In this document: positions 17,421 to 44,400 of the stretch, one piece after another
Layout: every line of letters starts with the position of its first letter
Position numbering within the stretch: position 1 is the stretch's first letter
DNA from: Magallana gigas
Lineage: Eukaryota
Direction of reading: 5' to 3'
NCBI RefSeq assembly: GCF_963853765.1
Contig: NC_088858.1
Location: 6,882,001 to 6,946,000, forward strand
DNA length: 64,000 nucleotides
The notes under the pieces: model-generated
Database searches by the model: none
The model's input: only the letters and a program-made list of their open reading frames with translations
Told to the model about the DNA's origin: nothing
Program-made: the position numbers and the translations under genes

Positions 17421-20400
17421 TTACACATACCACTCCTTGACATCCTTCTTCTTTCCTGACTTTCCGCCCCCACCACTGTGGTTACCTAGCAATGCTCCAT
17501 TACCCTGCTGTTGTTTCTTTTCTAGAAAAGCAAAGTTCTGACTTTCGTCCACTTTATACGTGCCCTCGTCACGACTCCGAAATTTATACAGTGCTATTAT
17601 TAGAATGATGAGTGCTACTAAAACCCCGCCCACTATGCCTATAATAAGGGCGAGGTTTGGAGTTTGTGTCACTTCCTGTTCCCTGCTGGAGTTCGCAGGG
17701 CGTTGAGGATTATATTCAGTGGAAGGCTTAGAGCCCTCTATGTTAAGCTGTCCCGACTTTGAAGAGTTCCGGTCTGGCTTCATTAAGTTGGTGCTCTCCA
17801 CTTGATTGTCACAGTTCAGTAAATCTTTAGAATAGCAAGGTCCCGTGTCAGTGCTGAAAGTCAAGACAGATTAACCATTAATCATCAATCTACCCCAAAT
17901 ATTTTAATGGAATCTGAAATATTAGTCTTTAGATACAGAGATGATTTTTAAGCATGCTTCTGAGGAAAAAGACATAGTTTATATCAAGTATGGCATTTTG
18001 AATAATTTCTTAAACAAAAACTTTTAAATACTGTTAAGTTAATACCGGTAAGTTAATACATGTATTAATAAATGACTAACCTTTTGGGTGGAGGTTTGGT
18101 GGTTGGTTTGTAAGTGAACTTGACCGTGGTGGAGATGATGTTGTCCGAGAATTCCTCCTGGGCACAATCGTCCTCGTCATCCTCCGGACACCTGATTCCT
18201 CCCTCTCCTGATCCCGCCGGGACTATGATGTCATCCGTTACCCCGTCGTGTGGGGTGGTCTGCTGTATCAGAAAGATGCATGTAGTGCATTACAGGGATA
18301 GGTGAAAGTCTGTTTGTTAAAATTTTTATTGAAGAAGTATTTGAAAAATTATGTATTGTCTTGATATTTTCAGGGGAAAGCAATTCATTTTTTTAAAGAA
18401 TATTCAAGCATCATGCAGTTCAATGAGATAACCTCTGTTGATCTAAATACTAGTATTCCATAATTTATTATACAATCGTTCATTTTTCATAAAATTTTTG
18501 AAATAGATGTTAGTGTAAAAACAAAGCAAACCTAAAAAAAAATATGGAAATAAACTTCCAAATGTGTTTTTTTTTTTTTTAATTTCAAAGAGTTAGAAGA
18601 CAATAAAAGTGTTGGAGAAAGAAAGAGAAAGGTGGGAATAAAATGGTGAAAACAAAAACGTATGGAACATCAGGCAACTAATGTTTCTTAACAGAATACA
18701 TATCATCTAACTAAGCAATCCATTTTTTTTCTTTATCTGAAAAGATGGCATTAATTCTATTTGGGTTAAAGTTATAATTTCAAATCATCCACCAGTTTGC
18801 TACTTTCAATATCCAAGTTTCTCCTCTACACACTGTCATAACATGTTAGTAGTCACTCAGACCTTTCACTAACTGTTTCAGTTATGATGTATTAGTAGGA
18901 ATACTTTATTGCTCCAGATCTTCCACCTATGTGGTTATGATGTATTAGTAGGAATACTTCATTGCGCAAGATCTTCCATCATCTAGTTATGATGTATTAG
19001 TAGGAATACTTCATTGCGCAAGATCTTCCATCATCTAGTTATGATGTATTAGTAGGAATACTTCATTGCGCAAGATCTTCCACCTATTTAGTTATGATGT
19101 ATTAGTAGGTATACTTCATTGCTCAGATCTTCCTCCTACTTAGTTATGACGTAAAAATAGGAAACTAGGAATATTAAGAAGCTAAGATATTACATATACT
19201 TAGTTATGATGTATAAGTAGGAATAATTCATTGCTCAAGATCTTCAATCTATCTAGTTATGATGTATTAGTAGGAATTCTTTATTGCTCAAGATCTTCCA
19301 CCTATTTAGTTATGATGTATTACCGGTAGTAGGATTACTTCATTACTCAGATCTTCCTCCTACTTAGTTATGATGTATTAGTAGGAAACTAGGAATATTA
19401 CAAGGTAAGATCTTCCATCTACTTAGTTATGATGTATTAGTAGGAATACTTCATTGCTCAAGATCTTCAATCTATTTAGTTATGATGTATTAGTAGGAAT
19501 TCTTTATTGCTCAAGATCTTCCACCTATTTAGTTATGATGCATTACTGGTAGTAGGATTACTTCATTACTCAGATCTTCCTCCTACTTAGTTATGATGTA
19601 TTAGTAGGAAACTAGGAATATTACAAGGTAAGATCTTCCATCTACTTAGTTATGATGTATTAGTAGGAATACTTCATATCTCAAGATCTTCCACCTATTA
19701 AGTTATGATGTATTAGTAGTTATACTTCATTGATCATGATCTTCCAGCTATTTAGTGATCATGTATTAATAGGAATACTTCATTGCTCAGGTCTTCCACC
19801 TAATTAGTTTATGATGTATTAGTAGGATTACTTTATTGCTCAAGATCTTCCATCATCTAGTTACGATGTATTAGTAGGAATACTTCATTGCACAAGATCT
19901 TCCATCATCCAGTTATGATGTATTAGTAGGAATACTTCATTGCTCAGATCTTCCTCCTACTTAGTTATGACGTAAAAATAGGAAACTAGGAATATTAAGA
20001 AGCTAAGATCTTACATCTACTTAGTTATGATGTATTAGTAGGAATACTTCATTGCTCAGATTTTCCATCTATTTAGTTATGATGTATAAGTAGGAATACT
20101 TCATTGCTCAGATTTTCCATCTATTTAGTTATGATGTATTAGTAGGAATACTTCATTGCTCAGATTTACCATCTATTTAGTTATGATGTATTAGTAGGTA
20201 TACTTCATTGCTCAGATTTTCCATCTATTTAGTTATGATGTATTAGTAGGAATACTTCATTGCTCAGATCTTCCATCTATTTAGTTATGATGTATTAGTA
20301 GGAATACTTTATTCCCCATGATCCTTTTGCCCAGTTATCATGAGTTAGTAGGGATAATTCATTCCTCATGATGTTTTGCTCCTCCATGTACCTGTTATGA

Positions 20401-23400
20401 TGTGTTAGTTGCAATCTTCCATTCCTCATGATCCTCCACTAACAATTGCGGTTATCATGTGTTAGTAGGGATATTTCATCTCATGATCCTCCATCAACAT
20501 AGTTATCATGCATTAATAGAGATCTTCCATTCCCCATAATGCTCCACTCAGTGTTTCAGTTTTCATATGTTGGTAGTGATACTTAATCTTTCATGATCCT
20601 TCACTTACTGTCTTAGTTATTACATGTTAGTAAAGATCTTTTAATCTCATGATTTTTCACTTTCTCATTATTATGTTTTATTAGGGATCTCTCATCTCTC
20701 ATGGTCCTTCCCTGTCTCATTAATCAAGCATTAGTAGAGTTCATCCTCCACTTACTGTCTCAGTGATTGGATGATAGGTGAACTGAACCACTTCCTCTTC
20801 GCCCAGCACCACACCCCCCTCCTGGCCCCGCCCAAGCCCAATGTCAGCCCAGGGCTTCATCTGGTTCGACTCAGCAGGGTCGGTCTCTAGCTTCCTTGGA
20901 ATCACATGATGGACAGTGTCCTCGTATCGACTATTGCTCGCCTTATAATCCACATCTATGGTCCTCCAATCCTGCTCTTGGCTGGTCATATCTTGGTTCC
21001 CGCTCCCCGACCCCTGGTAGTCTGCACGGTTGTCAAAGTCTGCGTCATCGCTCATGTAATCCAACAGAATATTTTGTGGTTCTAGTCTTAAGTCATCTTC
21101 AAGTTTTAACTCCTCAGAATTCATCAAAGAAAACTTAACGACCTTGTCTTTGCCAGACACTTGTGCATTATTTGAATTGCTAGAATGCTTGCTGCTGCTA
21201 TAAGGTGAAAGTACCTCCCTAGAATTTCTTCTCTGGGTTCGCTTGATGCCTATTTTCCTAATATCAATTTTTCTGTCTATCTTAAGAGAGTGATAAACTT
21301 AATTATACAAACAACTAAAGAAAAAAAATCCACAAAAGTATCAAACTGAAGCAAAGTTTTAAATCAAAACTAAAGAATTGTCAGACTGAAAACATTTTAG
21401 TGTTCATGTATGTAAAATGGCAAGTGTAAAGAGAAGTCTAGAAATGAAAGTTTGGTAAGAATCAGAGAATGACACGTACCCTTATTCCTTCTGTTGACTG
21501 CATTTCATGTTTTCTACAATTGACATTGATTCATGTTAATAACAAAACAGCTATATTCAGGACTTAATATGGTCTTTCAATACTAAAAAAGCAAGAAAAT
21601 ACATTGAAAATAAATACTGACAAATTAAATGTAGAGATATATGAAGAAATACACGATTGCAGTTTCATACAGAGTATTGAGGACATAACGCAACCAGTCT
21701 GATATTTTTAGGTGAGGCCCAAGTTACCTGTCGTACCTGGTAGTAGTGGGGCAGAGCAAAACATTGCCCTCCTTCACAACGAACGGGTCCTGAACACAGG
21801 CCAGATCGATCACCCGTTTACCGTTGAACACCAAACCTACACCCCAACAGTGAGAATCAATGCAATAAAATGCAATTATGTTATTTATAAAATGTATGAT
21901 AGTTGCAATGTTAAAGTTAGAATATTCATGTACTAATGATTCTATGAGCAAAAGGTAAGATGGACTAACAAAACATAGCAATTAAAGTTCAAATTACTAC
22001 ACCAATGGTTTGGAGAGTAAACAAATTGAATTGACAAATTAAATTTAAAAATCTAATGACACAGTAAAATTTAATCAGATGAAGTAAATTAAAATGCTTC
22101 TCAGAAACAATACCTGAAATAGATCCCCTGAAGAATGGTTTCTTTCCATTTCCACCCACAATGATTTTGGATTGGTTGTTGAAAACACTCCATTGTTGCT
22201 CTTCTCCTATAATTAATATAATATAGTTAAACTATTAATTATCGGTAATTCACAGAATATTTCATGTAACTATTACAAAATCTTATTTGAAGCTGTCATT
22301 TTCTTTGGAGTTATCTCTCATTGCTCGTAACTCATCAATTTCATAAATTCAACAGGAACAAACTGTTCAGTCGAGAGAACTTTATATACAATGATAACCT
22401 AGAGACAAGTGCACATCCATTACCTGGAAACTCATTCACAGAGAAAAGCTTGGATAAAAAACCTGATGCATTAAAAAGGCAGAAGTAAACATCACATGTA
22501 CAATGTATTTTGCATAAATTCATGGATTGGGATCATCAGTTTTTGGGGGATCACAATTTTGTGGATTTTATGGATAAGTACCGAGTACCCCATACATACA
22601 ACATACATTTCTATTATTACTTAAGAAATTACTTTATTGAATCATTTCATCATAATTTGTTTGAGAAAATCATCAGTCCATGCAATTACATATTAATATT
22701 ATCAGCTGTTACTTTTGAAGAATCCACAATGATTTGTGTTATCCTTCCCAAAAACTTGATGTAATCCCTTCAATCTTTTGTTTAAATACCTTCACACAGG
22801 TATTACAAACATTAACATACATTGTATTACATTACATGTACAAATACATTTGTAAATAACTGCCTGAAAAACCGTGCAGGAATGGTGAAAACATAACCTT
22901 TAATAAAATGATAAATTTCACTAATTTAATCCACAAAATTGATGCCTATTAACATTAAAGAATGCACAGTAGACAGGTGTAACTTTTAAGTAGTTTACTG
23001 TAAAACTGGTAATTTACGCGTAAGGGAAAGGACTACATGGTTGTGGTATTATGCTTTTCTTGTCCCAAAATTAAAGTTCTATAGAAAGCTTTGCAAATAA
23101 GGTTAAAGATAGTTGAAATCGTATTGAATAGGTACATTAAAGGTTATCACCTCAATGTTTTTTTTTTTTACTAGGAAACATACAGTGCATATTGCTTGCT
23201 CTAGTATCTTTTTTAAGTATGATGTGTAAAATCATGTAAAAATCTTACTTCAGCAGACCTGCGCTCTATAATTTCAAAAGCAAAATATGAAGGATAATGA
23301 CAATATTTTCATTTGTTTGCGCATTTGCAGGAATGAGCCCATTTTAGTGATGTCATAGATAAACACCAACATGTATTAGACAATGAAGAACAATATCTAG

Positions 23401-26400: not shown

Positions 26401-29400
26401 GAACTGTTACCTTGACAACCCTCCTCTACACCATAGTAAATCTTCTCTGCTTCTCTGAATAAGTTAGGCCTCCGCCCATTAAAGTCGACAGACGCCATGC
26501 ATCCCTGGAATCCATAAGGTGATGAATACGGAATGTCATTGAACATGGACTTACTGACTCCCCCGACATAAAGGTAACCAGTCAGATCCAGATGCAGCTT
26601 GGTTGACCCCGTGAGGTCACTGATGGTTGGATGTTCATCGTCCACGCGGATCTGGATCTGCTCAAGCCCCGGTCGTTGTACGGACACCAGGTGCCACTGG
26701 TTGTCGTTGAGTCGTTGCTGGATGTTGACCACCACACGCTGTGGGCCCCCGCCCATGTTAAACAGGACGTGGAGATACCCATCCTGTAGCTCTATAGCGA
26801 TGAAATCCGGTCCCTGGCCACCGTTATACAGTAACAAACCATACAACTCAATTGTCTTAAATTGGAAGGAAATGGAAAACTGAGACCTGGCAAGCAGTTT
26901 GGGAAGAGTAACATATGCATCTTTTGACTTGAATGTCACAGTGTCCTTAAGAACTGGAGCATCCGAGTTAAACTGAGCAGTGATATTCAGATTTGGAAGT
27001 GAATTGGTCTTGGCAAGCTGGATAATCTCCTTGTTGTTAAAGTAAAACTGTTGCATAGATCCCACAAAGCTAGGAATTTGGTGGAGATATAAGTCATCCT
27101 TTGGCATGATGCTTCTACCTACCTCCATCTGTAGCAGGTTCATTGACTGGTGCACTCTGGGATATGTATCTGGAAAACAGACCCAATAAAAGTAAACATA
27201 TGAAGCAAGAAGTTTTACAACAAGATAACTTTGTGCAATCAGTTATTACTAACATTTTATTGCATTTATTGGTGAAAAAACCAGCTAGGTCAGTGGGCCA
27301 TTCATTGCTCACCTGAGTTACTGGTTACTGAAACAAAGCAGACCAAATCAATATTTGTGCAATCTGTATGCTTGGATTTGTAAAAATATTATTTTGCTTG
27401 TAATCAAGCTTGTTTTGTTTAGTGCTTTGTCTCTGTTTTATGTCCATTACTAATAAGACAGCATCACTAGTTCTTTTAAATAAAACCTGAAGAAGAGAAA
27501 AGATGGAAACAAAACATGCAGAGGACAGACATCTTTGAACAGAAAATCCCATAACTGTCTCTGACTCAGGCAAGCTCATATACGAACTTTGTCATCTCCA
27601 TCACGAATTTTTAACAACATTCCCATATAAATATGGTTTTTGCACACTCAACAATAAAACCGCCAAACACAATAGAGATAAATAATCTAAAAGTCTATAA
27701 ATAAGCAGTTCTACAATCTCCACCATGCAATAAATCAGTACATACAGAAATGCAATTACCAGAAACAAGAAAATTGCAGATGTGCAATAACAAAGCAGTC
27801 ACAAAAGACCAAATAAATGACAATTTTAATTTCAAATCACTTCTATGATATTGCAAGTCTCCAGAGACATTCAGCACAGAGGTGCACAAGGATGAAGTGA
27901 CTAATGCCAAGTGGGAGTAAGAAAAAAATAGGGATGAAATGAAAAACGCGTGAAAGCAGGGACAATGGAGGGAACCAGGCATAGTGACATTGCCAGGAAG
28001 GCCCGAGGATGAGAAACAAGTATATTTACCAGAAGGCAATGGGCCGGGGGAACCTAGCAACAAGAGTTTTATGTTCATGACCTTCACATAGGAGGAAGAG
28101 AATGCTACTGAAAAATAGAGAAGAATCAATCAATAGAGAGACTGCTGCAGGCCGCTAAGACCGGGTCTAATGTGTTGTGTTCAAATCTTTACATTATTAT
28201 ATTGCCGTTATCTGATTGCTTTACACAGATTGGGTCATACAAAGAGTTCCCTTTTGGTTTTCTGTAATTTTTACGACAAAGATTTAAAATGAGACTTGAA
28301 ATTCGAAACAACGATTTAAAGCGTCTCTATGGGATAAGAATTTTAAAATTCTTAATATCATATGTAGATTTCTAGTACGGTAGATAGAGCTAATATAAGT
28401 GCAATTAATCAAAAGACAGGTGTGATATCTTGAATGTTACCTGCACTAGGGTAATTGTCGTCTATTTTCAGGGTGAGTGTATCCCCTCGCCTTGTCATGT
28501 AAACAGTATGCCAAGCTAGGTCATTTAGTCTCTCTCGGCCAATTGTCATTTGCTGAAAAAGTAAAAGTTAAACACCTAATTTTTATACTGCAACATCAAA
28601 ACACTTAAAAATTGTATTATGTCCTATAAATTTTTGGCTCACTAGTGATACCCCCGCTCTGATGTGAATATGCAAAAAAAGCAAAGTCATCATTTAACAG
28701 GAAGTTGACATCCGATTGAAACAAAAATATATTCAACAATATGGCATGCCAAAACAAATAGTGTGTAAAACTTTCAAGCATCTGCGATAAATAGCTGCTG
28801 AGAAATCTTTGACGAAAATTTGGGCTAAAATTAAACAAAGTCGACATTTAACAGGAAGTTGACACCCGATTGGTACAGAAATATATCCAACGATATGGCA
28901 TGCCTATACAAATATTGTGTAAAAATTTCAAGCATCTGCGATAAATAGTTGCTGAGAATTCTTTGACGGAAATTTGTTTGAAAATTTTGGCAAAAAATAA
29001 ACAAAGTCGTCATTTAACAGGAAGTTGACGTCTGATTGGTACAAAAATACATCCCACGATATGGCATGCCTAAACAAATAGTGTGTTAAAATTTCAAGCA
29101 TCTACGATAAATAGCTGCTGAATAAATCTTTGACGAAAATTTGGTTGAAAATTTTGGCAAAAAATAAACAAAGTTGTCATTTAACAGGAAGTTGACGTCT
29201 GATTGGTACAAAAATATATCCCAGGATATGGCATGCCTATACAAATACTGTGTAAAAATTTCAAGCATCTGTGATAAACAGTTGCTGAGAAATCTTTGAC
29301 GAAAATTTGTTTGAAAATTTTGGTTAAAAAATAAGCAAAGTCATCATTTAACAGGAAGTTAACGTCCGATTGGTACAAAAATATATCCCACGATATGGTA

Positions 29401-32400
29401 TGCCTTAACCAACACTGTGTTAAAATTTCAAGCATCTACGATAAATAGTTGCTGAGATAAATGCGACAGAAATTTTTGTTACAGACGGACAGACAGACGG
29501 ACAGACAGACAGACACACAAGGGTAAAACAGTATTCCCCCTCTCCTTCGGAGCAGGGGTATAAAAATGGGATACAGCAAATAAAAAAACACTACACGTTT
29601 ACTTCAAATTTTGCAAAATTTACAAAAAAAAAGATTTTATACCAAATCCAACTGATCCCTTGATCCTTATATTCCCCTATCTAAGACCCCTAGCTCCTCA
29701 TTGACACTTTGATTCCCATTGACCCCTTGCTCCTCACTCACACTTTGATTCCCATTGACCCCTAGCTCCTCACTGACGCTTTGATTCCCATTGACCCCTA
29801 GCTCCTCACTGAAGCTTTGATTCCCATTGACCCCTAGCTCCTCACTGACGCTTTGATTCCCAATGACCCCTAGCTCCTCACTGACGCTTTGATTCCCAAT
29901 GACCCCTAGCTCCTCACTGACGCTTTGATTCCCATTTACCCCTAGCTCCTCACTGACGCTTTGATTCCCATTGACCCCTAGCTCCTCACTGACGCTTTGA
30001 TTCCCATTGACCCCTAGCTTCTCACTGACGCTTTGATTCCCATTGACCCCTAGCTCCTCACTGATGCTTTGATTCCCATTGACTCCTAGCTTCTCACTGA
30101 CACTTTGATTCCCATCGACCCCTAGCTCCTCACTGACGCTTTGATTCCCATTTACCCCTAGCTCCTCACTGACGCTTTGATTCCCATTGACTCCTAGCTT
30201 CTTACTGACACTTTGATTCCCATTGACCCCTAGCTCCTCACTGATGCTTTGATTCCCATTGACCCCTAGCTCCTCACTGACGTTTTGATTCCCATTGACC
30301 CCTAGCTCCTCACTGACGCTTTGATTCCCATTGACTCCTAGCTTCTTACTGACACTTTGATTCCCATTGACCCCTAGCTCCTCACTGATGCTTTGATTCC
30401 CATTGACCCCTAGCTCCTCACTGACGTTTTGATTCCCATTGACCCCTAGCTCCTCACTGACACTTTGATTCCCATTGACCCCTAGCTCCCAAACTGATCC
30501 CCTGGTTCCTACTGACCCCTAGCTCCCAACTGATCCCGTCATTTGCTCCCCAATAATTCTAAAAATCCCTATTAACTTCTATATCTCCATTGATTTTCAA
30601 ATCTCCTATGACTTCTTAAGATTCCCAGTAACTTCTAGATCCCCACTGATCCCTAGCTCCCTAGTAGTCCTAATCCTCATTAACCTCTAGATCCCGATTG
30701 CTCTTTACATCCATATTGACACTTAGATCCCCACTAAACCCTAGCTCTCCACTAACACAGTTTTCCCACTGATCCCAACTAATTAACCCCTTGCTCTCCA
30801 TTGATCCTTAGATCCCCATTAACACCTAGATCCCAATTGATCTTTAGCTCCCCACTGACTTCTACATCCCACTGCCCCTAACTCCCCGTTGACTTCTTTA
30901 TTCCCACCTCTTTTTGGTTGCTGATGCTGATCTCCAGTTTGAGCTTCCCCCTGTCTAGGTATAGCAGCAGCATGTCCGAGGACTTCTGGGAGGAGGTGAC
31001 CAGAAGAAGACCGGATTCCCGCTCTGTCCGGAACCGCAGTGAAATGTCCTCCACCTCAGTCACTGACTCCTCAGGAAATGCCACTTTCATGTACTGACCA
31101 CCATCAAAATTTAGAGTGGATGCAACTGAATCAAAAAGCCAACAAAACATTTTATAACTAATAGTATACACGGTATATAGTAATGATTTGTGGAAATCTT
31201 TTTTTGCATATTTATTTGCAAACAATTTCATCTTGATCAAAGTGATTTAAAATAGCAAGGAAAAAACAGAGGATTCCTCATATTAATGATATATGTATCT
31301 ATTATTATAAAATCAAGTTATAATTTTCAGGGAAAAGCAAGTCAAAACTGACATTCATATGTAGATAAACATTTTTATGTATGTACCCAATAAAAATGTT
31401 CATACTGACTTGAACATCAATTCACTTGTTGTTGATAAAGGCAAAAATCTTAACCAAAAAAGTATCAACAACAAAGTTCATTGTCTTTGGACATGAAACT
31501 CTGCAATATCCTAAGATTAAATAACTGTCCATGTTTGTAAGCCTTAAGTGTACATTTTACTTCCTGCAGGGAAATCAATATTTTACAGGGATGGAGATTA
31601 GCCTGTTAAACCAATTTCCATATATTTGGAGGATATAAGCAATATACTCCGAGTTTTCCAGAAATGGTGTGCTGCCATTTCTTACTGAAGTCAAATGGAC
31701 TGCATGATGAAATGGCAGCAGATTAGGAATAGACTTAATGGAAGGTATCTGGTTTTCTACAAATGCCCCGACTCATCAACATCCCACCACCATCAGATAT
31801 ACAGTACATCTATCAAATTGCTCAATTGGACAGATAGTACATCGCAGTCTTGATTAATTGCCAAATCTCAGACAAATATTCCCTGTGATGACAATTTGGC
31901 TTTGGATAAGGGGGGCCTGAAAATCCATCTAATGGCAGTGGTAAGGGCATTAAACCAAATAAGTCAGACAAACTGATGCCAGAGCCTTGATTTGATGGTA
32001 AATTCAGCTTACCAATTTGTTGCTTTGTCTTCCTAATGAACACTAAGAAGAGATATTCCTAATATGGTAAGCTCCTGTTTTACAATACATTTGTTGTGGT
32101 AACATGTATATATCATTTTCATGAACTTTGGAAATAAAATTGAGTTGTTTTAGGATACATTTGTTAAGTAACTTGTATATACTGATTACCAGTGTATTCA
32201 TGAACTTAAGCTACCGGAAACAAATTATTGAGTCAAGTGTGGCTACTCATAAAAAGATCAAATAAGTAGTTTGCTATAACTTGAGTTTGATCATTCTCCT
32301 ATGCACTTCTCACATGTTTAATATTTACAATGACAAAAAATGTGACTACTGTTCCGAGAGTAGATGAGTTTTAGTGATTCTATCAATATTTATGCCTACT

Positions 32401-35400
32401 AAGATAATGGAAACGAGCACAGATGTTGGCACAACCTTATTAATTCATGCTTACTGTCTCCAAAAACGGCAAAATGTTTGATTAAGTATTCCTCCATTAA
32501 TAACTTCAAACAGAGAAATTGATCTGCCCCATACCCTAATTAAGGGACCATTCTGGTTTCTGGGGCTGGTTTTAGCCATGGTGACTACATACTTCACAAA
32601 TAATCATCACTTGTAAATGGATGCATTTCCTGAAATTAGCCAATTGATCTAGATCACAAAATCCACAGGGGAGTTGCATATTATTTTGCATTAACTATCG
32701 TTTTGAACTACATCAACAAGATCTGTACCAGCATCAGATGCTTTTTACTGAGCTAATGGCCAGCTAGCAAGGAGAAAGAAAGCATTCACCATCCAGATCC
32801 TACTCTTTATAGCGATCACTCAGACGATGACTGCAAAACACAGCGTCTACATCTGATGATCCAGTACCAAAAACTGTTCTGATATCAATGCCTTCTGAAG
32901 TTTTTTCTTATCTGTTTTGATATTTAAGTACATGCTAATGTGTGAACCAAAAATTTCTAACATATTTACTGGCTCTGATCAACACATAGTTACGGTAAAC
33001 AAACTTGTGCTTAAAAATTTCATCCAAACAATTTTCAAGATACTCCAAGCAAAGTGTATACATGTATTACTTTATACAGTAAATGAAAAAAAAGGGCACT
33101 TTTATTGATGTAAAATAGTTACCATTATCAATGACTGACAAAACATTCATACCAACTGTCCAAATTTTTCCTAAGCTTTTTTTTTTCCCACTATGACTGC
33201 ACTCACCTGACTGATACTGTGTACGATATCCCCTATAACTTCCCACCTGTCCTATCACCTGAGCCCACTCACCTGACTGGCATTAATTGTGTGCCACTGT
33301 ATGATATCCCCTTTAACATCCCACCTGCCCTATCACCTGAGCCCACTCACCTGACTGGCATTAATTGTGTGCCACTGTATGATATCCCCTTTAACATCCC
33401 ACCTGCCCTATCACCTGAGCCCACTCACCAGACTGGCATTAATTGTGTGCCACTGTATGATATCCCCTTTAACATCCCACCTGCCCTATCACCTGAGTCC
33501 ACTCACCTGACTGGCATTAATTGTGTGCCACTGTATGATATCCCTTATAACTTCCCACCTGTCCTATCACCTGAGCCCACTCACCTGACTGGCATTAATT
33601 GTGTGCCACTGTATGATATCCCCTATAATATCCTACCTTTCCTATCACCTGAGCCCACTCACCTGACTGACACTGTGTGCCTCTGTATGAGGTCCCCCGA
33701 CAGTCACACATGTACCTGTTCCAACCCTCGGAACAGGCCCCTCCATTTAGACAGGGCCGAGTTGAACACTTGACCCAGGTCTCGACCTTGCACCGGTCAC
33801 CTATCCCTGCCCGGCTGTTCTTCCTGGCCACCATTAACAGGTCCACTTTGTTTTCGTTCAGTACGAGGTCCTGCATGCACCCAACATAGCCATATCCAAG
33901 AGTCCCTGCCCAAAGGTCTTTCGGAATACCCTCATTAGTTGTTCCAAATCCCCCAACATAGAGCTCTCCATCCAGGTTTAGGTTTGTGCTGTTGCCTGGA
34001 ACAGTGTAATCTTTGGCCTCATTATCCAGAGAAAATGACCCAGATTTCCTAGTGGCAAAGTGTTTCAAAGTCACATGATGTGGCATCTTATCGTTTATTT
34101 TTTTGGCTATTTTGTCTTTGAATGCTCCAGAACCTAAGTCAATGATGAACCACAGGTAACCGTCAAATATTTCAAAGGCGAAAAAGTCTGAATTTCCTCT
34201 TCTGCGGTTATACATGATGACCCCTTTGTCTTCACTGGTTTGGAATGTAAATGAGAGAGAGGATCCCTCCTTTCTTACCTCCCAGCGAGGGAGTGGGATG
34301 AAGGACTCAGGGGTGGTGAAAGTAATTGGGTTAGTTTCTACAATATCTTGACATTGGTTGAAGGTTATCTTGCCTTCCACTTGAACAAAACTGTTGCCCA
34401 TCGATGCCATCTTGCTCAGGTCAAGTTTTAAACTGTCAGCCATGTAAATCACCTATAAAAGAAAGAAAATCAGTAGGAAAATGTCATATCTAGAGGATTT
34501 CAGCCACATTGACTGATCTTGAATAAGATATAGATTTATTTCTGTCACATAAAGATGAATCACGATATCCTCTTGTGCTGAAAATTGCCTTGTTAGTGAT
34601 TTTATGTGACATAAAATTGATAGCGGAGGATATTACAAGACGTTTGGTAATGTACACTGCTTACTACCAGAGTCTCTGTCTGATATTATTCCAAATTATG
34701 GGGATGTTTGTACACTTTTATTACTGAGATTTCGAAGGTCTTTGACAAAAACATCAAGTAAAGTTTGACAAGGAAAAGTATTAGCCACCAAATACCACCC
34801 AGATGGCTGATCAAACATGCATCCAAATCATCCTGTAAATCTTATTTTAGTCAATTCATCAAGAGCTTGCAGATAATGATTTTATCATGTTTATTACAGA
34901 TAAAAACTGCAACATTAAACATTCCCTCAAAATTAGGTTGCATTGACATTTGCAAAAGCCATAACTTCATTTTTAATCAGAGGTTTCCCCCCACAAAACG
35001 CATAAAAGACTGCATGGTGTAAAACCCTCTCCATAAAATGTCACATCCTTGCAGAGAAGCTAGGGGACTTTGTTACAATTACTGGTAATCAAATAGAATG
35101 ACAGAAGAGGGAGTAAGTGAAAATCAATGGCCCCCACACCACTATTAAAGTTGCTGAATTGTCCAAAAGTCTACAAAAACCATCAATATGTAGGTCAACA
35201 ATTAAAATAACAAGCAGCCCACAGGCCACAATGCTCACCTGAGTGGCAATGTCAAACCTACAAAATTAGATGAATAGCTTAACTATTGAAGTGGCATATT
35301 AATTCTTAAAATACTTGCATCCAATTTTCTTTAATAATTCAAGTTATAGAACTTATTTGTTGAATAAGACTGTTTATAATAAATGTATAATACATGTATA

Positions 35401-38400: not shown

Positions 38401-41400
38401 CTATGTGTCAAAATGTGCCATATATGGTACTTGTTTGATTTTTCAATCAAACCAAACAATCAAACCAACAAGTGAAAAGCTGTCAATGTGACAGCAAACG
38501 GGGTTTTCTTTTATGTGAACTGTATCCATAATCCATGTCAACCTGTATCCAGTGAAATGGAGTACCCTATATGCAAAATTTTGCCAAAAAATGACTAAAT
38601 TCAAAAGCTTGTATTTTTTTCATAAATTATCAGAAATAAAATCCTAGCAGTATGCATACCTCTGATATATGTTCAATTGATCTGCAAAAGAACAACTTCT
38701 TATCTAGAGAACTGTAGGAGGAGTTATCCGTACAATGAGGGTACCCTATTTGCAATATTTTGCCAAAAAATGACTAAGTTCAAAAGCTGGTATTTTTTTC
38801 ATAAATAATGGGAAATCAAAATCCTAGCAATATGCATACCTCTGATATATGTACAATTGATCTGCAAAAGAACTTCTTCCTACCTTGAGAACTGTAGGAG
38901 GAGTTATCCGTACAATGAGGGTACCCTATATGCAATATTTTGCCCAAAAAATGACTAAGTTCAAAAGCTGCTATTTTTTTCATAAATAATCGGAAATCAA
39001 TATCCAAGCAATATGTACACCTCTGATATATGTACAATTGATCTGCAAAAGAACAACTTCCTATCTTGAAAATTGTAGGAGGAGTTCTCCGTATAATGAG
39101 GGTACCCTTTTGGCAGCCGCCTGCCCGCCCGCCCACCCGCCCGCCATTTTCACCTGTCCATTTTAATAACTGGATTTTTCCGTTGGAAAACCCGGTTAAA
39201 AAACTTTCAACAAAAATCTATTCATTAAGTTAGAGTAAAACTTTGTTTCTAATGTTCATTGCAGCTCTGAAATACTAACTGCCAAGAATTTACTGATTTG
39301 GTTCCTAATTTTACTTCTTAATTTTCCTCATCTTTGTGACCTCTGACACAAACCTTCTTTATCCATGTGGAAGATGACCAAGTGAAACAAACTGATATCC
39401 TTTTTTTTTTTTATCTTCTAGTTCCCTCTAACAAAAACCTTTCCAATCTGCTTGGTAGATGCCCCTCTCCCACAAAACTCATCAATCTCCATTACCCTTT
39501 TCACAGAAACTTTTTCCATGCAGATGACTCCTGAAACAAAACCTATTCTACAAGACCCCTCCAACAAATACCTTTTTCATGCATCCTTTGAAGTAGTTAG
39601 TGACAATGATGCCCTGTCCCATCCGCATGGCGCGGGGGTGCCCACCCACATACAGAACTTTGCTGTCTAGCATGGTGAACGTCCCGACCATGCTCCGCTC
39701 TGTCGAGTGAATCCCGTCCACTGTCATCTTCACCTGTAAAGAACCAGAAAATCTTCATTTAACCCCCGCAAAAAATACTTTCATTAATATTGAACGAATA
39801 GATTATATATAGTTCTTACACAAAGATTGGGTTGTATACAATATTGTAACTGGCTGTTCAAGATTTTTAAATACTTTGCAATCAAAAAACATTTACGTCT
39901 ACTAATTTTAATTACTGGTATATATCTCATTATTACAGAACCTAAACAAAATATTTTAATAATTTATGTTAACTGTGAATAACTGAATTGTTTGAGTTCC
40001 TTTATTATTGATAATGTTAATATTTGATATTCTCAGATTTCACTCTGTTGGTATTAAACCTCTGGGTTTTAAGGGTTGTTGATGATCATGTGTATTCTCA
40101 TATCTAATATGATGCCATTTAATTAATTCTTTTTTGTCTATATAAATATGATTGATTTGTTCCAAAAATCAACGGGAAAACACACTGGGGGGAAACAATG
40201 CACACAGAGAAAACAAAACACAAGGAATTCCCAGAGGCCCTCAGTCAACATGGCCAACAGTGGTATCAGATCAAACCAGCATAATTACTTAACTCCATTA
40301 AAGCCCTAATTCAGACCAACCAGAAAATGAATCGAACGCTCCTCATTTTGAGTCAGTGGCCCCTGAGTAATGAAATAGCCCAAGGCTTTAGTCTTCAGGG
40401 CTTATGAAACATGTAAATATCAATTACATTTCCATCAGCTGACCAACAGTTCCAGAGTTCCAACTCTTAATACTGATGAGCAGGTTTAGAATAGATTTGA
40501 TTGGTCTCGCCAACACCACTCCCAAGCTCTTCCACAAATCTGATTTCTGAATTCACACAGGGGCTATTGGTGCCCACAAAATGCCACATCCTTCACGCTC
40601 CTGTAATAAACCTAGTCCCAATTCCACACAGGGTCTCCTAGAAAGGTTAGCTTTACACAAATTACACATTGCTCTTTACTGGATCCATTGAAGTAAGCAT
40701 TGAAGTGAACACTGGTCCTCACATTGATTCAATATAACAACAATATAACAAAGTAACAAGCTCAGACAAAGACAGTTCTACCTACATCTCTGTAACGCCA
40801 TGCTTTTCCTCAAATGTCAATGACATGATTCCACTAAATACATGTAGCTAGTTTTTTTCTCTAGTGCAGCGACTCTAAAGATCTTTGAAGATTTCCAGGT
40901 GGAAACCATCATTTAATATCATGTTATGTAACAGACTTGGATTGATATATGACATGTGTTACTATCAGAAAATACATTCCCTCACTTAACCTTGAACTCT
41001 AAGATATTTCTTCAGATCTAACATGATTTTAAAGAAGAATTACTTGCGAGTAACTTTATAAGAACAAACTACAGAATGATATTGTTGTTCGTCCCTCGGT
41101 GGCAAAATTACCCAATACAAAACATGTAATAGGTTACTCTTCACAGTCTACTGCAGCTTTAATCCAGCCAAACCATGCAATTTATTGAACATGTACCACA
41201 AAAGAGAAACAGCCTCAAATACATCATCCATTTTCTGTACAGATTTTGCAAACACTTGATCACAATCATGGTTGCCGTTGTGAACAATCAACAGACACGC
41301 AAGAGGACTGAACACTATATACAACAAATGTCTGACAGAGGGACATTCTTTTTTGGCAGATATATATATATATATATGGTACATTAGAGTCTTGTATTAC

Positions 41401-44400
41401 AAGTAGATCTATGATGACAAGCCTACAAACAACAAAAAATGAAACACAAGGTTCACTGGCCAATACATAAAATAATGTATCAGAAACAGGGAAACACAGG
41501 AAGGAATCCATGCAGTCATGCTTCCATGGTAACTCACAATCGCCATGGTTACTTACTATATACTTGGCATTTCCTACTGTCAGCTTTTCAATTAATGAAA
41601 AAAATTCAAACTCAATAGAAAATAAAACATTAGTTTCAAGTAAATTAAGGGTAAAAAGTGCAGAGTGATTAAAAGTTGTACACAGCGGTGCTGTCTATTC
41701 TAAACGTGTTCTATCTCAATTCGTGCTTAGTTTTCTAGCAGCTTCAAGACAATTTTGTTGCAATGCATGATTATCAGTCAAACGATAATGAACTGTCCTC
41801 ACTTAATGATGACTGAATCATTCTTTTATTTTATTAAAGTTATCTTGAAACAAATTGATGACGTTGAAGCTACCAGCAATCATAAAGATCAATGAACATA
41901 TTGCACCTATTGCATTCAGCTAAAACTGGTGCTAAAAAAATCATAAAACATAGATGTCTATAACTAAAGTTACAATAAAACATAGCTGCATGTCCTGCAA
42001 TAAATACATTGTAGATAGGAGGGAGGACAGACTCAGACAAAGGAGTTACCTTCCTTGAAGACCTGGTTAACAACAGGTGGTGCCACTGGTTGTCATCAAA
42101 GCGATAATCACTGGGACTGACATCCACCTTGGTCTCACCGCCACCTAAGTTAACAATGGCCATGATTGTTCCACTCCTCAAAGCAATGCTAATGTAGTCA
42201 CTTTTTTCACCTGAAATATACATTTCATTTGTCATTATCTGGAATCTATAAACAAGATATCTGTGAGCCAATGCTCACTAGTGATACCCCCGCTCTGATG
42301 TGGATATGCAAAATAAGCAAAGTCGACATTTAACAGAAAGCTGGCATCCGATTGGAACAGAAATATATCCCACAATATGGCATGCCTAAACAAATAGTGT
42401 GTTAAAATTTCAAGCATCTGCGATAAATAGCTGCTGAGAAATCTTTGAGAAAAATTGGTTTGAAAATTTTGGCTAAAATAAACAAAGTACTCATTCAACA
42501 GGAAGTTGACGTCCGATTGATACAAAAATATATCCCACAATATGGCATGCCAAAACAAATAGTGTGTTAAAATTTCAAGCATCTGCGATAAATAGCTGCT
42601 GAGAAATCTTTGACGGAAATTTGTTTGAAAATTTTGGCTAAAAATAAACAAAGTACTCATTACACAGGAAGTTGACGTCCAATTGGTACAAAAATACATC
42701 CCACGATATAACATGCTTATACAAATACTGTGTAAAAATTTCAAGCTTCTGCGAGAAACAGTTGCTGAGAATTTTTTGACAAAAATTTGTTTGAAAATTT
42801 TTGCTAAAAATAAACAAAGTCGTCATTTAACAGGAAGTTGACGTCTGATTGGTACACAAATATATCCCACGATATGGCATGCCTATACAAATATTGTGTA
42901 AAAATTTCAAGCATCTGCGATAGATAGTTGCTGAGAAATCTTTGACGAAAATTTGTTTGAAAATTTTAGTTAAAAAATAAGCAAAGTCGTCATTTAACAG
43001 GAAGTTGACGCCCGATTGGTACAAAAATATATCCCACGATATGGCATGCCTTAACAAACACTGTGTAAAAATTTCAAGCATCTGCGATAAATAGTTGCTG
43101 AGATAAATGCGACAGAAATTTTTGTTACGGACGGACAGACAGACGGACGGACAGACAGACGGACACACAAGGGTAAAACAGGATACCCCCTCTCCTTCGG
43201 AGCGGGGTATAAAAAAAAGTTTTGTTGTTACAGTCAAATGATATCTTGAATATATTTTTTTAATTGATAAGAATCTGTGACCAGTTTTTTTGGTACTATT
43301 ATTCTGACCTTATAAAGAAGGAATTTTTACCAAAATGCATGGAAACAAGTTTAATTTTCCACATTAGAATGATTCCATCGAAATAAATCAGATTTTTCAA
43401 ACCTAACCTTTTGGAAGTCACAAAAACATGTCCTTAACATGGCTCATTTGCATTTGCAAACTTTGATCACAAATGCTAATGTAATTTCCTTTGTAGCAGA
43501 AGAGCTGATACATGTATTTACAGAAATAATATCTTTTTAATGAAATATCAGTGAACAGAATGTGACTTGAACCGCATCGAAAAATTCCCAATACTCAGAT
43601 AAGAGTTTACAGTTACCGTCTCCTGCAAAGGGGTTTTATGAATAACAGCTATACTTTAATTGCATGCTTCTCCAGAACTTTACTAAAACAAGAGTACTAC
43701 CAGCCATCCCCTGCACCCCCCCCCCCCCCCCCCAAACAAATATCAAGAATAGCGGACACTGACAAAGAGCAATTGGTGAAATTGAATGATGACATTCCAT
43801 TATTCTTTTTTCACGTGCAACAAAATTCATTTTCATGTCATTATAATCTTAAGATTCACACAATTAAATTTATACAGTACTGTTTCTGAATCAAAGCGTT
43901 AAGCAATTGCACAAAACCAACCAGAGCATGCAAAAAGGATAACTGATATGTCATAAAACCCAAAGATTAATTTGTTTAATAATTTGAATGAAATACTTTT
44001 GTTGATTGAACTAACAGATGCTGAACCTTCATAATAAAGAACATTATCATCACAGCCTGTAAGATTATTCTTACTTTAAATTTTTTAATATGACTTGCTG
44101 CCATTTGTTTTTAATCTTGTATTCTATATTTTGGTGAACATTCAATTTCCACTTGTCATAAACTTGTCAAGTTCCTGATTTTCCAAAGCTACATGCAAAA
44201 CCTAATATATGTGACTCTATGTCAGTCAAAAATTAATTCAATGTGTCTCCAAATAATCTTAATTGTGATCCTTACATGTAGTACAATCTTTCAGTTTCAT
44301 TTTCATTTGAATAGTTCTAGATATCTAATAAAATCTTGAACACAAATCTGTCTATTCAAGTTGGAAAATATTTAAAAACAATATATCATAGGGTGCTCAG

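What the first reader, a model, noticed from the sequence alone, without database searches (positions are those of the whole stretch)
18870..20755. Intronic minisatellite is an array of about 20 bipartite STAR/QKI-type elements next to a neurexin stalk exon
Seen: on the transcribed strand, most 52-bp units read TACTAAT-ACATCA-TAAC, and several degenerate units near the exon read TACTAAC. The array starts immediately after the donor of the 525-nt cassette. Established: NACUAAY-N(1-20)-UAAY is the Quaking response element; UACUAAY is also the SF1/branch-point consensus; STAR-family proteins (SAM68, SLM1/2) control vertebrate neurexin splicing. Inference: a copy-number-variable splicing rheostat or protein sponge controlling inclusion of the stalk cassette. 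Caveat: AT-rich units can match such motifs by chance.
Basis: partly seen in the sequence, partly recalled or inferred. Interest (0 to 1): 0.75.

Follow-up and report, generated by a model that had tools for sequence, protein, structure and literature searches.

The report
Splice-junction minisatellite in oyster neurexin intron
An oyster neurexin intron begins with 36 tandem copies of its own exon end plus splice donor, and each copy carries a strong match to the Quaking/STAR protein binding site; the way the repeat arose explains that match, and any effect on splicing of the neighbouring optional exon is plausible but untested.

Summary
On the transcribed (minus) strand, 36 tandem units tile 20755-18838. 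Twenty-five match NACUAAY-N1-20-UAAY and 18 read exactly TACTAATACATCATAAC. The array starts at the donor of a real neurexin-1 exon that RefSeq models annotate as both included and skipped.

The array is a splice-junction ("mirage"-type) minisatellite, a known kind. Each unit copies the last ~18 nt of the exon plus the first ~40 nt of the intron. The ACUAAY core comes from the intron. The UAAC half-site comes from the exon's Ile-Thr codons. The bipartite match was therefore made by the duplication and then spread by descent.

Several points favour a neutral array:
- Two other introns of this gene carry the same kind of array without the motif.
- Arrays with TACTAAY units are no commoner genome-wide than a reversed control.
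- The "free" spacer is as invariant as the motif in the young units.

One point favours function. In a distant species with no array, the first 40 nt of this intron are 80% conserved, with UACUAAC intact at +33. The founder element is therefore probably a splicing regulator. A QKI/HOW-type gene exists in the genome.

A rheostat or sponge role is untested. The scan has already noted such junction arrays elsewhere in this genome.

The parts
21480..21513 (-). 34-nt microexon upstream of the stalk exon. It sets the reading phase to 0 for the next exon.
   Evidence: Transcript L037 maps to it. The sequence and flanking AG/GT are shown. The peptide KHEMQSTEGIR appears in the RefSeq isoforms.
20756..21280 (-). 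Neurexin-1 stalk cassette exon, 525-nt form (175 codons). It encodes a conserved DDADFDNRADYQGSGSG block. An alternative acceptor 4 nt downstream gives a 521-nt form starting at 21276.
   Evidence: Open frame. 99% identical to XP_034326815.1 residues 1302-1476. Isoforms with and without the exon exist. Transcript L037 uses acceptor 21276 and donor 20756|20755. The exon is conserved in five other species' contigs.
20750..20755 (-). Authentic 5' splice site GTAAGT. These are the first bases of unit 1 of the array.
   Evidence: The junction is used in transcript L037.
20333..20755 (-). Eight old, diverged units (37-61 nt) next to the exon. Five of the eight carry ACTAAY, three of them as TACTAAC. 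A second perfect GTAAGT decoy lies in unit 4, at about 20602-20607.
   Evidence: The same units are present in seven other individuals' contigs. Homologous units occur in related species L028 and L027.
18880..20332 (-). Twenty-seven young units of 50-60 nt, mostly 52-53 nt. They are organised in a 223-nt higher-order repeat whose copies are 97.8% identical. Twenty of the 27 carry TACTAAT.
   Evidence: The unit 35-mer is found 21 times in the whole genome, always inside this array.
18838..18879 (-). Distal old unit, GAAACAGTTAGTGAAAGG...TACTAAC. It is probably the displaced original copy of the intron start.
18263..18837 (-). Unique remainder of the intron, running to the acceptor. The nearest array copy is about 580 nt from the 3' splice site.
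18085..18262 (-). Next constitutive stalk exon (QTTPHDG...SGEGG...Cys loop). It starts in phase 0, so skipping the 525-nt exon keeps the reading frame.

Best explanation
The array is a splice-junction ('mirage'-type) minisatellite in the neurexin-1 gene of an oyster, most likely Magallana/Crassostrea gigas.

**Origin.** A segment made of the last ~18 nt of the stalk cassette exon (…ACAUG-AUAACUGAGACA) plus the first ~40 nt of the intron was duplicated in tandem. That intron segment runs from the donor GUAAGUGGAGGAUCAUGAGGAAUGAAAGAUCCC to UACUAAC. The array then grew and was homogenised by unequal exchange. This left old, diverged units at both edges and a young core with a 223-nt higher-order repeat.

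**The motif.** The ACUAAY core of every unit descends from an intronic UACUAAC about 33 nt downstream of the donor. The UAAC half-site descends from the exon's Ile-Thr codons. The duplication joint therefore created the bipartite Quaking-type match, which then spread by descent.

**Splicing and function.** The spliceosome uses the first (authentic) donor and removes the whole array with the intron. The founder 40-nt block is conserved well beyond normal splice-site needs. It probably is an intronic splicing regulator of the cassette exon, for which a QKI/HOW-type STAR protein or SF1 are the obvious candidate readers. The many extra copies are most likely neutral or nearly so.

**Shown:** anatomy, origin, descent, conservation of the founder block, cassette annotation, donor usage.
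**Inferred:** a regulatory role for the founder block, its reader, and neutrality of the extra copies.
For: - **Unit anatomy.** Every unit ends in …ATAACT GAGACA and the next begins GTAAGTGGAGGA or a decayed form of it. This is the exon end plus donor. The exon ends of other species read CCAATAACTGAGACA|GTAAGT.
- **Founder block.** In the distant single-copy species L034 the intron starts GTAAGTGGGGGATCCAGAGGAGTGGAAGACTGTACTAAC. That is 80% identical over 40 nt to the ancestral unit, with TACTAAC 7/7 in register and no half-site after it. The coding exon is only 68% identical, and the rest of the intron does not align.
- **Age structure.** Old units sit at the edges and the core is homogenised. 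Higher-order-repeat copies are 97.8% identical.
- **Locus-specific.** All 21 genome hits of the unit lie inside the array.
- **Sister arrays.** The same anatomy occurs at two other donors of the same gene: 78-nt units with exon end plus CAG|GTGAGTGGG, and 36-nt units. The whole rest of the gene holds only 2 bipartite matches.
- **Authentic donor used.** Transcript L037 splices at 20756|20755.
- **Cassette status.** Isoforms include the exon (XP_034326815.1, XP_052699082.1, XP_052699085.1) or skip it (XP_065945349.1 with EGIR|QTTPHDG, XP_052699090.1).
- **Known kind.** Amphioxus mirages show the same concerted evolution that spares the boundary units (PMC3087553). The first unit of the human F7 IVS7 37-bp VNTR spans the exon boundary (PMC1557585).
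Against: - The motif-bearing 3' block of the unit varies less than the rest. In young units, 3.7% of motif cells mismatch against 13.0% elsewhere, with 4 derived states in 10 columns against 56 in 43 (p=0.007). In old units the figures are 18.9% against 44.2%. In related species L028, 5 of 6 units keep ACTAAC plus TAAC. This could mean that selection acts on many copies, not only the founder.
- Length variation between individuals could not be measured, because short-read contigs break at the first young unit.
- The neutrality of the extra copies is an inference, not a result.
Confidence: 0.65

Rival explanations
1. **Functional multi-site STAR element.** The array as a whole is bound by dimers of a QKI/HOW-type protein. 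Binding downstream of the exon promotes or tunes inclusion of the stalk cassette, and the number of units sets the dose response ('rheostat') or titrates the protein ('sponge').
For: - 25 high-affinity-type bipartite matches lie directly downstream of an annotated cassette exon.
- A QKI/HOW/GLD-1-type STAR_dimer gene is present, scoring 62 bits, above the Pfam cut-off.
- The founder UACUAAC is conserved across distant species.
- Motif columns vary less than the unit average, and 5 of 6 units keep the motif in L028.
- Precedents exist. UACUAAY/ACUAAY in the downstream intron goes with QKI-dependent inclusion (PMC13004596). A 51-nt STAR-site cluster immediately downstream of Nrxn2 AS4 acts in a density-dependent way (PMC5397175). 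HOW controls Neurexin IV splicing through intronic sites (PMC3919595).
Against: - There is one founding event, with a chance probability of 0.4-2.5% per array.
- Genome-wide, arrays with TACTAAY triplets are fewer than the reversed control, 571 against 1414.
- The half-site is a copy of exon codons, and the single-copy outgroup has no half-site.
- The unconstrained spacer is as invariant as the motif in young units, 3.1% against 3.7%. Pooled over three species, motif columns are only about 0.83 conserved against about 0.72 for their neighbours.
- L027 has lost the motif in both units seen.
- Seven of the 27 young units have already lost the core, through about 4 events.
- Sister arrays arise in this gene without the motif.
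- There are no binding, expression or copy-number data.
Confidence: 0.17
2. **Decoy splice-signal platform.** The units carry a consensus branch-site sequence (UACUAAC/U), and the older ones also carry 5' splice-site-like GUAAGU/GUUAGU. The array could recruit SF1/U2 and U1 non-productively. That would help define the upstream exon, or slow removal of this intron, rather than act through a STAR dimer.
For: - UACUAAC is the optimal SF1/branch-point sequence (PMC13004596).
- Old units keep donor-like sites: GTAAGT in unit 4, GTTAGT in unit 7 and in the distal unit.
- In the F7 IVS7 VNTR the repeated pseudo-donors are functional but silent (PMC1557585).
Against: - The young units have lost the GT of the donor copy (AAATAGATGG, AGATGATGG).
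- The nearest unit is about 580 nt from the real acceptor, so it cannot serve as that intron's branch site.
- GTAAGT followed within 20-45 nt by TACTAAC is not over-represented in the genome, 615 against 1391 for the control.
- There is no evidence of cryptic splicing in the one transcript seen.
Confidence: 0.07
3. **Sam68/SLM (KHDRBS)-type response cluster.** On this reading the array works like the one downstream of vertebrate neurexin AS4, acting through U(A/U)AA repeats.
For: - The position immediately downstream of a regulated neurexin exon resembles the Nrxn2 AS4 cluster (PMC5397175).
- Young units contain one UAAA at the unit joint.
Against: - UWAA is less dense in the array (14.1/kb) than in the rest of the gene (19.6/kb).
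- No Sam68-type Qua1 match was found in the genome. That blank is weak evidence.
- The splice site is SS5-like (stalk), not SS4.
Confidence: 0.02

Closest known systems
'Mirage' minisatellites of amphioxus (Adh3 and globin genes; PMC3087553)
   Same: Both are tandem repeats whose unit spans an exon-intron boundary. The copies carry splice signals, yet normal splicing is kept. Concerted evolution homogenises the core, and the boundary units are left out of that homogenisation.
   Different: This one is in a mollusc. Its 52-57-nt units sit at a donor next to an annotated cassette exon. The duplicated intron piece contains a conserved UACUAAC, so each unit becomes a bipartite STAR-type match.
Human F7 intron 7 37-bp VNTR (PMC1557585)
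   Same: The first unit spans the exon-intron boundary. The authentic, most upstream donor is used, and the downstream copies stay silent.
   Different: Here most downstream copies have lost the GT. The array is much longer (36 units, 1.9 kb). The neighbouring exon is alternative.
Quaking response element and the QKI/SF1 positional splicing code (Galarneau & Richard 2005, as cited in PMC13004596)
   Same: The sequence matches NACUAAY plus UAAY within 1-20 nt. Its location in the downstream intron is where ACUAAY goes with exon inclusion.
   Different: Binding and effect are untested. The bipartite spacing was made by a duplication joint. There are 25 copies, where known targets have one or two.
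The 51-nt SLM2/Sam68 response cluster downstream of Neurexin2 AS4 (PMC5397175; also PMC3636136)
   Same: Both are clusters of STAR-protein sites immediately downstream of a regulated neurexin exon. In the vertebrate case site density changes the response.
   Different: The motif differs (UWAA there, ACUAAY here; UWAA is not enriched here). The splice site differs (SS4 in LNS6 there, an SS5-like stalk position here). The known effect at AS4 is repression.
HOW-dependent splicing of Drosophila Neurexin IV (as described in PMC3919595)
   Same: An invertebrate QKI-family protein acts through intronic ACUAA-type sites on a neurexin-superfamily pre-mRNA.
   Different: Neurexin IV is a Caspr-type protein, not neurexin-1. 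Its sites lie near an acceptor and are not a tandem array.
Splicing-associated tandem repeats in humans (spl-TRs; PMC10078293)
   Same: Intronic tandem-repeat length can be associated with splicing of nearby exons.
   Different: That evidence is statistical association in humans. No such data exist for this locus.

Membership tests
Splice-junction ('mirage'/F7-IVS7-type) minisatellite | A tandem array whose first unit spans the exon-intron boundary | tested here: met
   Unit 1 starts at the donor GTAAGT (20755). The exon's last bases...ATCACTGAGACA, are the counterpart of every unit's end...ATAACTGAGACA.
Splice-junction ('mirage'/F7-IVS7-type) minisatellite | Units are copies of the exon end plus the splice signal plus the adjacent intron | tested here: met
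   The ancestral unit aligns to the single-copy intron start of L034 (80% over 40 nt) and to the exon ends of L029/L033.
Splice-junction ('mirage'/F7-IVS7-type) minisatellite | The authentic outermost site is used in mRNA and the array is spliced out | tested here: met
   Transcript L037 joins 20756 to the exon at about 18262. The RefSeq peptides read ...HPITET|QTTPHDG.
Splice-junction ('mirage'/F7-IVS7-type) minisatellite | Concerted evolution of the core, with diverged boundary units | tested here: met
   There are 8 proximal and 1 distal old units, and 27 young units with a 223-nt higher-order repeat whose copies are 97.8% identical.
Splice-junction ('mirage'/F7-IVS7-type) minisatellite | Length polymorphism between haplotypes | tested here: inconclusive
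   Seven conspecific short-read contigs all break at the first young unit. Small indels of 7 and 10 nt are seen in the old units. Look-ups of the C. angulata and M. gigas gene records returned nothing.
Quaking response element (bipartite QRE) | An NACUAAY core on the transcribed strand | tested here: met
   27 ACTAAY, of which 25 read TACTAAY.
Quaking response element (bipartite QRE) | A UAAY half-site 1-20 nt from the core | tested here: met
   25 bipartite matches, 18 with the exact 6-nt spacer ACATCA. The half-site is absent in the single-copy outgroup L034.
Quaking response element (bipartite QRE) | A QUA1-containing STAR protein of the QKI/HOW/GLD-1 type is encoded by the organism | tested here: met
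   PF16544 STAR_dimer match at 62.2 bits, over the cut-off, at G000:C9:36512385-36512486.
Quaking response element (bipartite QRE) | Direct binding by the STAR dimer and a position-dependent effect on the neighbouring exon | not testable with these tools
   This needs EMSA or fluorescence polarisation, CLIP, and minigenes.
Quaking response element (bipartite QRE) | Motif positions under stronger constraint than the other positions of the unit | tested here: inconclusive
   Motif columns vary less than the unit average. But the spacer is equally invariant in young units, neighbouring columns are nearly as conserved in the three-species pool, and no SNP signal is seen in 8 haplotypes.
Sam68/SLM2 UWAA response cluster (neurexin AS4 type) | Local enrichment of U(A/U)AA motifs | tested here: not met
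   14.1/kb in the array against 19.6/kb in the rest of the gene.
Functional branch site of this intron | Lies within a few tens of nt (rarely a few hundred) upstream of the 3' splice site in use | tested here: not met
   The last TACTAAC is at 18851-18845 and the acceptor is at about 18263, roughly 580 nt apart.
Dispersed satellite-like arrays carried by mobile elements (e.g. oyster Helentron arrays, PMC7492417) | The same unit family is present at many genomic loci | tested here: not met
   The unit 35-mer with up to 3 mismatches is found 21 times, all inside this array. A 261-nt query hits only this locus.

The most novel reading that the evidence does not exclude
The junction duplication did more than copy a conserved UACUAAC intronic element. 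By joining it to an exon-derived UAAC, it converted a single STAR/SF1 core into high-affinity bipartite Quaking-type sites and then multiplied them about 25-fold. The array would now act as a natural, length-variable binding-site-density dial. Through it a QKI/HOW-type protein, for example in glia or muscle, would set inclusion of a 175-residue stalk insert that carries a second glycosaminoglycan-type SGSG site in oyster neurexin-1.
Probability: 0.12. Interest if true: 0.8.

Novelty: new member of a known kind. Interest (0 to 1): 0.4.

Why it matters
As it stands, this is another example of splice-junction minisatellites, which earlier notes of this scan report as recurrent in this oyster genome.

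Its extra value is as a natural experiment. A conserved intronic element next to an annotated neurexin cassette exon has been amplified 36-fold, and the amplification itself created textbook bipartite STAR-protein sites. If copy number varies between oysters, as such arrays usually do, then long-read genotypes plus RNA-seq could show whether binding-site number in the downstream intron tunes exon inclusion in vivo. For neurexins, that question has so far been addressed only with engineered minigenes (PMC5397175).

The locus is also a caution. A repeated motif match in a minisatellite counts as one event, and its parts can be accidents of where the duplication broke.

Tried and rejected
1. **Dispersed transposon or satellite origin.** Rejected. 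The unit is unique to this locus.
2. **Branch site of this intron.** Rejected on distance, about 580 nt from the acceptor.
3. **Sam68/SLM UWAA cluster.** Rejected. UWAA is not enriched.
4. **A general link between GTAAGT and a TACTAAC 20-45 nt downstream, or an excess of TACTAAY arrays in the genome.** Rejected. Both patterns are rarer than their reversed controls.
5. **Structured RNA.** No Rfam family matches, and three units fold with a z-score of only -2.0.
6. **Full-length proteins found from single exons.**
   - The stalk exon found only genomic ORF fragments in both protein libraries.
   - The last exon likewise found only fragments.
   - A profile search finally reached a transcript-derived ORF (P0043). 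Through its cluster I reached the RefSeq isoforms.
7. **Fetching the orthologous gene records.** Look-ups of the C. angulata and M. gigas isoforms, intended to compare array length, found nothing on record.
8. **L035.** It looked like a divergent species, but it is bisulfite-converted DNA of the same species and was ignored.
9. **Population SNP test in the old units.** Too few variants to say anything.
10. **No joined protein model.** I did not build or search a joined (spliced) protein model. Exons were searched one by one by reference, and database isoforms were used instead.

No contig looked human.

Full report
**What is there**

The window is G000:C6:6882001-6946000 of a 564-Mb bivalve genome. 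A neurexin gene runs on the minus strand. An assembled 5.9-kb transcript (Logan SRR22387569, locus L037) maps to 19 exons from 59058 down to 17287. The last exon ends in the neurexin/syndecan-type tail ...KKKDVKEWYV.

The exon next to the finding is 20756-21280 (minus strand). It is 525 nt with an open frame. It is 99% identical to residues 1302-1476 of XP_034326815.1, neurexin-1 isoform X2 of Crassostrea gigas. Its sequence sides with the M. gigas RefSeq peptides rather than the C. angulata ones, so the organism is most likely the Pacific oyster.

The exon lies just after the last LNS domain, in the stalk. It encodes a conserved block, DDADFDNRADYQGSGSG...HHVIPRKL, that is kept in five other species' contigs.

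**Cassette status**

The 90% cluster of the transcript-derived ORF holds three kinds of RefSeq isoform:
- **Exon included:** ...EGIR|IDRKIDIRK...HPITET|QTTPHDG, in XP_034326815.1, XP_052699082.1 and XP_052699085.1.
- **Exon skipped:** ...EGIR|QTTPHDG in XP_065945349.1, and ...EGIR|TTPHDG in XP_052699090.1.
- **Truncated:** ...EGIR|TEKLILGK*, in XP_052699091.1.

The transcript L037 shows the truncated form. It uses an acceptor 4 nt downstream (exon start 21276, 521 nt), which breaks the frame.

Inclusion and the donor at 20756|20755 are shown directly by a transcript. Exons were searched one at a time by reference.

**The observation**

Tandem Repeats Finder finds a 52-nt array at 18880-20313, with 26.6 copies and a 223-nt higher-order period. 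Tiling the minus strand from the donor gives 36 consecutive units, 20755 to 18838:
- 8 diverged units next to the exon
- 27 young units
- 1 diverged unit at the far end

On this strand there are 27 ACTAAY: 21 TACTAAT, 4 TACTAAC and 2 not preceded by T. Twenty-five match NACTAAY-N1-20-TAAY, and 18 read exactly TACTAATACATCATAAC. The other 33 kb of the gene hold 2 bipartite matches.

**Where the unit comes from**

Aligned units give this ancestral unit:

GTAAGTGGAGGA TCATGAGGAATGAAAGATCC CTACTAAC ACATGATAACT GAGACA

- **The 3' end is exon.** ...ATAACTGAGACA followed by GTAAGTGGAGGA is the exon end plus donor. The exon ends ...CCAATCACTGAGACA|GTAAGTGGAGGA here and ...CCAATAACTGAGACA|GTAAGTGGAG in two more distant species.
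- **The first 40 nt are the intron start.** In a distant species with no array (L034; exon 68% nt identical, the intron otherwise unalignable), the intron begins GTAAGTGGGGGATCCAGAGGAGTGGAAGACTGTACTAAC. That is 80% identical to the unit, with TACTAAC 7/7 in register at +33. It is not followed by any UAAY.

So a unit is exon(-18..-1) plus intron(+1..+40). The ACUAAY core is intronic. The UAAC half-site is a copy of the exon's Ile-Thr codons. The bipartite Quaking-type arrangement was created by the duplication joint.

**A known kind**

Tandem repeats that span an exon-intron boundary are known from two sources:
- **Amphioxus 'mirages'.** Their cores evolve in concert and their boundary units stay diverged (PMC3087553).
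- **The human F7 intron-7 VNTR.** Only the first donor is used (PMC1557585).

Both features are seen here. Higher-order-repeat copies are 97.8% identical, old units sit at the edges, and the authentic donor is used.

Two other introns of this same gene start with such arrays:
- **33220-33669:** 78-nt units, each carrying the exon end plus CAG|GTGAGTGGG.
- **29685-30533:** 36-nt units, with degenerate copies up to the donor near 30878.

The 78- and 36-nt arrays are shown.

Earlier notes of this scan (s1-382358, s1-388578, s1-381015) report the phenomenon as recurrent in this genome. I checked the literature lead and the two sister arrays myself. The unit here is locus-specific, since all 21 genome hits lie in the array. 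It is therefore not a mobile-element satellite.

**Is the motif more than chance?**

All copies descend from one founder, so there is one event.
- A 53-nt unit holds the bipartite motif on the sense strand with probability 0.4% (real 53-mers of this gene) to 2.5% (shuffles of the unit).
- Genome-wide, three TACTAAY spaced 30-60 nt apart occur 571 times, against 1414 for the reversed control.
- GTAAGT followed within 20-45 nt by TACTAAC occurs 615 times against 1391.

Arrays of this look are not favoured in the genome.

| Unit class | Motif columns mismatched | Spacer mismatched | Rest of unit mismatched |
|---|---|---|---|
| Young (27 units) | 3.7% | 3.1% | 13.0% |
| Old (9 units) | 18.9% | 31.5% | 44.2% |

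- In the young units there are 4 derived states in 10 motif columns against 56 in 43 other columns (p=0.007).
- The supposedly free 6-nt spacer is as invariant as the motif.
- Five variant units with a rearranged middle inflate the 'rest' figure.
- Pooling old units of three species, motif columns are about 0.83 conserved against about 0.72 for their neighbours. Another block, GGAGGATCATGAGGAATGAAAGATC, is about as well kept.
- In related species, L028 (80% nt identity) keeps ACTAAC plus TAAC in 5 of 6 units. L027 (84%) has lost it in both units seen.
- Eight conspecific haplotypes show about 10 SNPs and 3 indels in the old units, none in a core. That is too few to test.

Verdict on this test: not refuted, only weakly supportive, and not specific to the motif positions.

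**What does speak for function**

The founder block is conserved for 40 nt downstream of the donor, across a divergence at which the rest of the intron is saturated. In the same outgroup contig, the alignment runs only about 6 nt past the donor of exon 21838-21737 and about 20 nt past the microexon's donor.

Such flanking conservation, next to an exon annotated as included or skipped, is what regulated exons typically show. The block contains UACUAAC, the optimal sequence for SF1 and, as ACUAAY, for QKI-family proteins. In the downstream intron this motif goes with exon inclusion in QKI-expressing tissues (PMC13004596).

The genome encodes a QKI/HOW/GLD-1-type STAR protein. STAR proteins control neurexin splicing in vertebrates through a dense site cluster just downstream of AS4 (PMC5397175). 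HOW controls Neurexin IV splicing in flies (PMC3919595). By contrast, the Sam68/SLM motif UWAA is not enriched here.

**Conclusion**

- **Shown:** a mirage-type junction minisatellite at the donor of an annotated neurexin-1 stalk cassette; the motif inherited by descent; the bipartite form made by the joint; the founder block conserved.
- **Inferred:** the founder block is a splicing regulatory element (I put this at roughly 55%). A QKI/HOW-type protein reads it (roughly 30%). The amplified copies matter for splicing (roughly 15%).

The array cannot be the intron's branch site, because it lies about 580 nt from the acceptor. No Rfam family matches, and the units do not fold notably.

The 'rheostat/sponge' idea is a fair hypothesis that this locus would test well, but nothing here supports it beyond the sequence match.

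Noticed in passing
window 21273-21282 (minus strand): The stalk exon has tandem acceptors 4 nt apart: TTAAG|ATAG|ACAG. The upstream one gives the in-frame 525-nt exon found in RefSeq long isoforms. The downstream one gives a 521-nt exon starting at 21276. It is used in transcript L037 and matches XP_052699091.1. It shifts the frame and ends the protein at ...EGIRTEKLILGK*, before the transmembrane segment. That product is either a secreted form or a decay target.
   Followed up: partly
window 33220-33669 and 29685-30533 (plus 30782-30871), minus strand: Two more junction minisatellites lie in the same gene. One has 78-nt units, each carrying the exon end plus a perfect CAG|GTGAGTGGG donor. The other has 36-nt units with CAGTGAGG, and degenerate copies reach the donor near 30878. 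Neither carries the Quaking-type motif.
   Followed up: partly
G000:C1:16725215-16727769 (minus strand): A roughly 2.5-kb array of 49-nt units, each carrying both GGGTAAGT and TACTAAC about 29 nt apart. It may be another splice-junction array. I did not check whether it lies in a gene.
   Followed up: no
L035 (Logan ERR10684015), matching window 20281-21624: This contig is bisulfite-converted DNA of the same species, with nearly every C read as T. In the stretch I read, downstream of the donor, the only C left is in the CpG at window 20449-20450. That suggests this intronic CpG is methylated (gene-body methylation).
   Followed up: no
window 18257-18264 and 21728-21737 (minus strand): Two further small alternative choices appear in the RefSeq peptides. 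One is a CAG|CAG acceptor at the exon after the array (...EGIR|QTTPHDG against ...EGIR|TTPHDG). The other is a 9-nt alternative donor that adds YDR after ...CPTTTR.
   Followed up: partly
window 28814-29462, 42310-43103 and 38562-39108: Arrays of 166-167-nt units from one family occur in two different introns of the gene, and a 181-nt array occurs in a third. Unlike the 52-nt array, these look like a dispersed, probably mobile-element-borne, repeat family.
   Followed up: no
L029-L033 (distant species), exon and upstream: In two more distant species, one ORF of 207-263 codons runs from the microexon region through the short intervening intron into the stalk exon. The microexon/stalk-exon arrangement may differ there.
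   Followed up: no
G000:C9:36512385-36512486: This is the only genomic match to the QKI/GLD-1-type STAR dimerisation domain (PF16544, 62 bits). It is the candidate oyster QKI/HOW orthologue to use in any binding or minigene test.
   Followed up: partly
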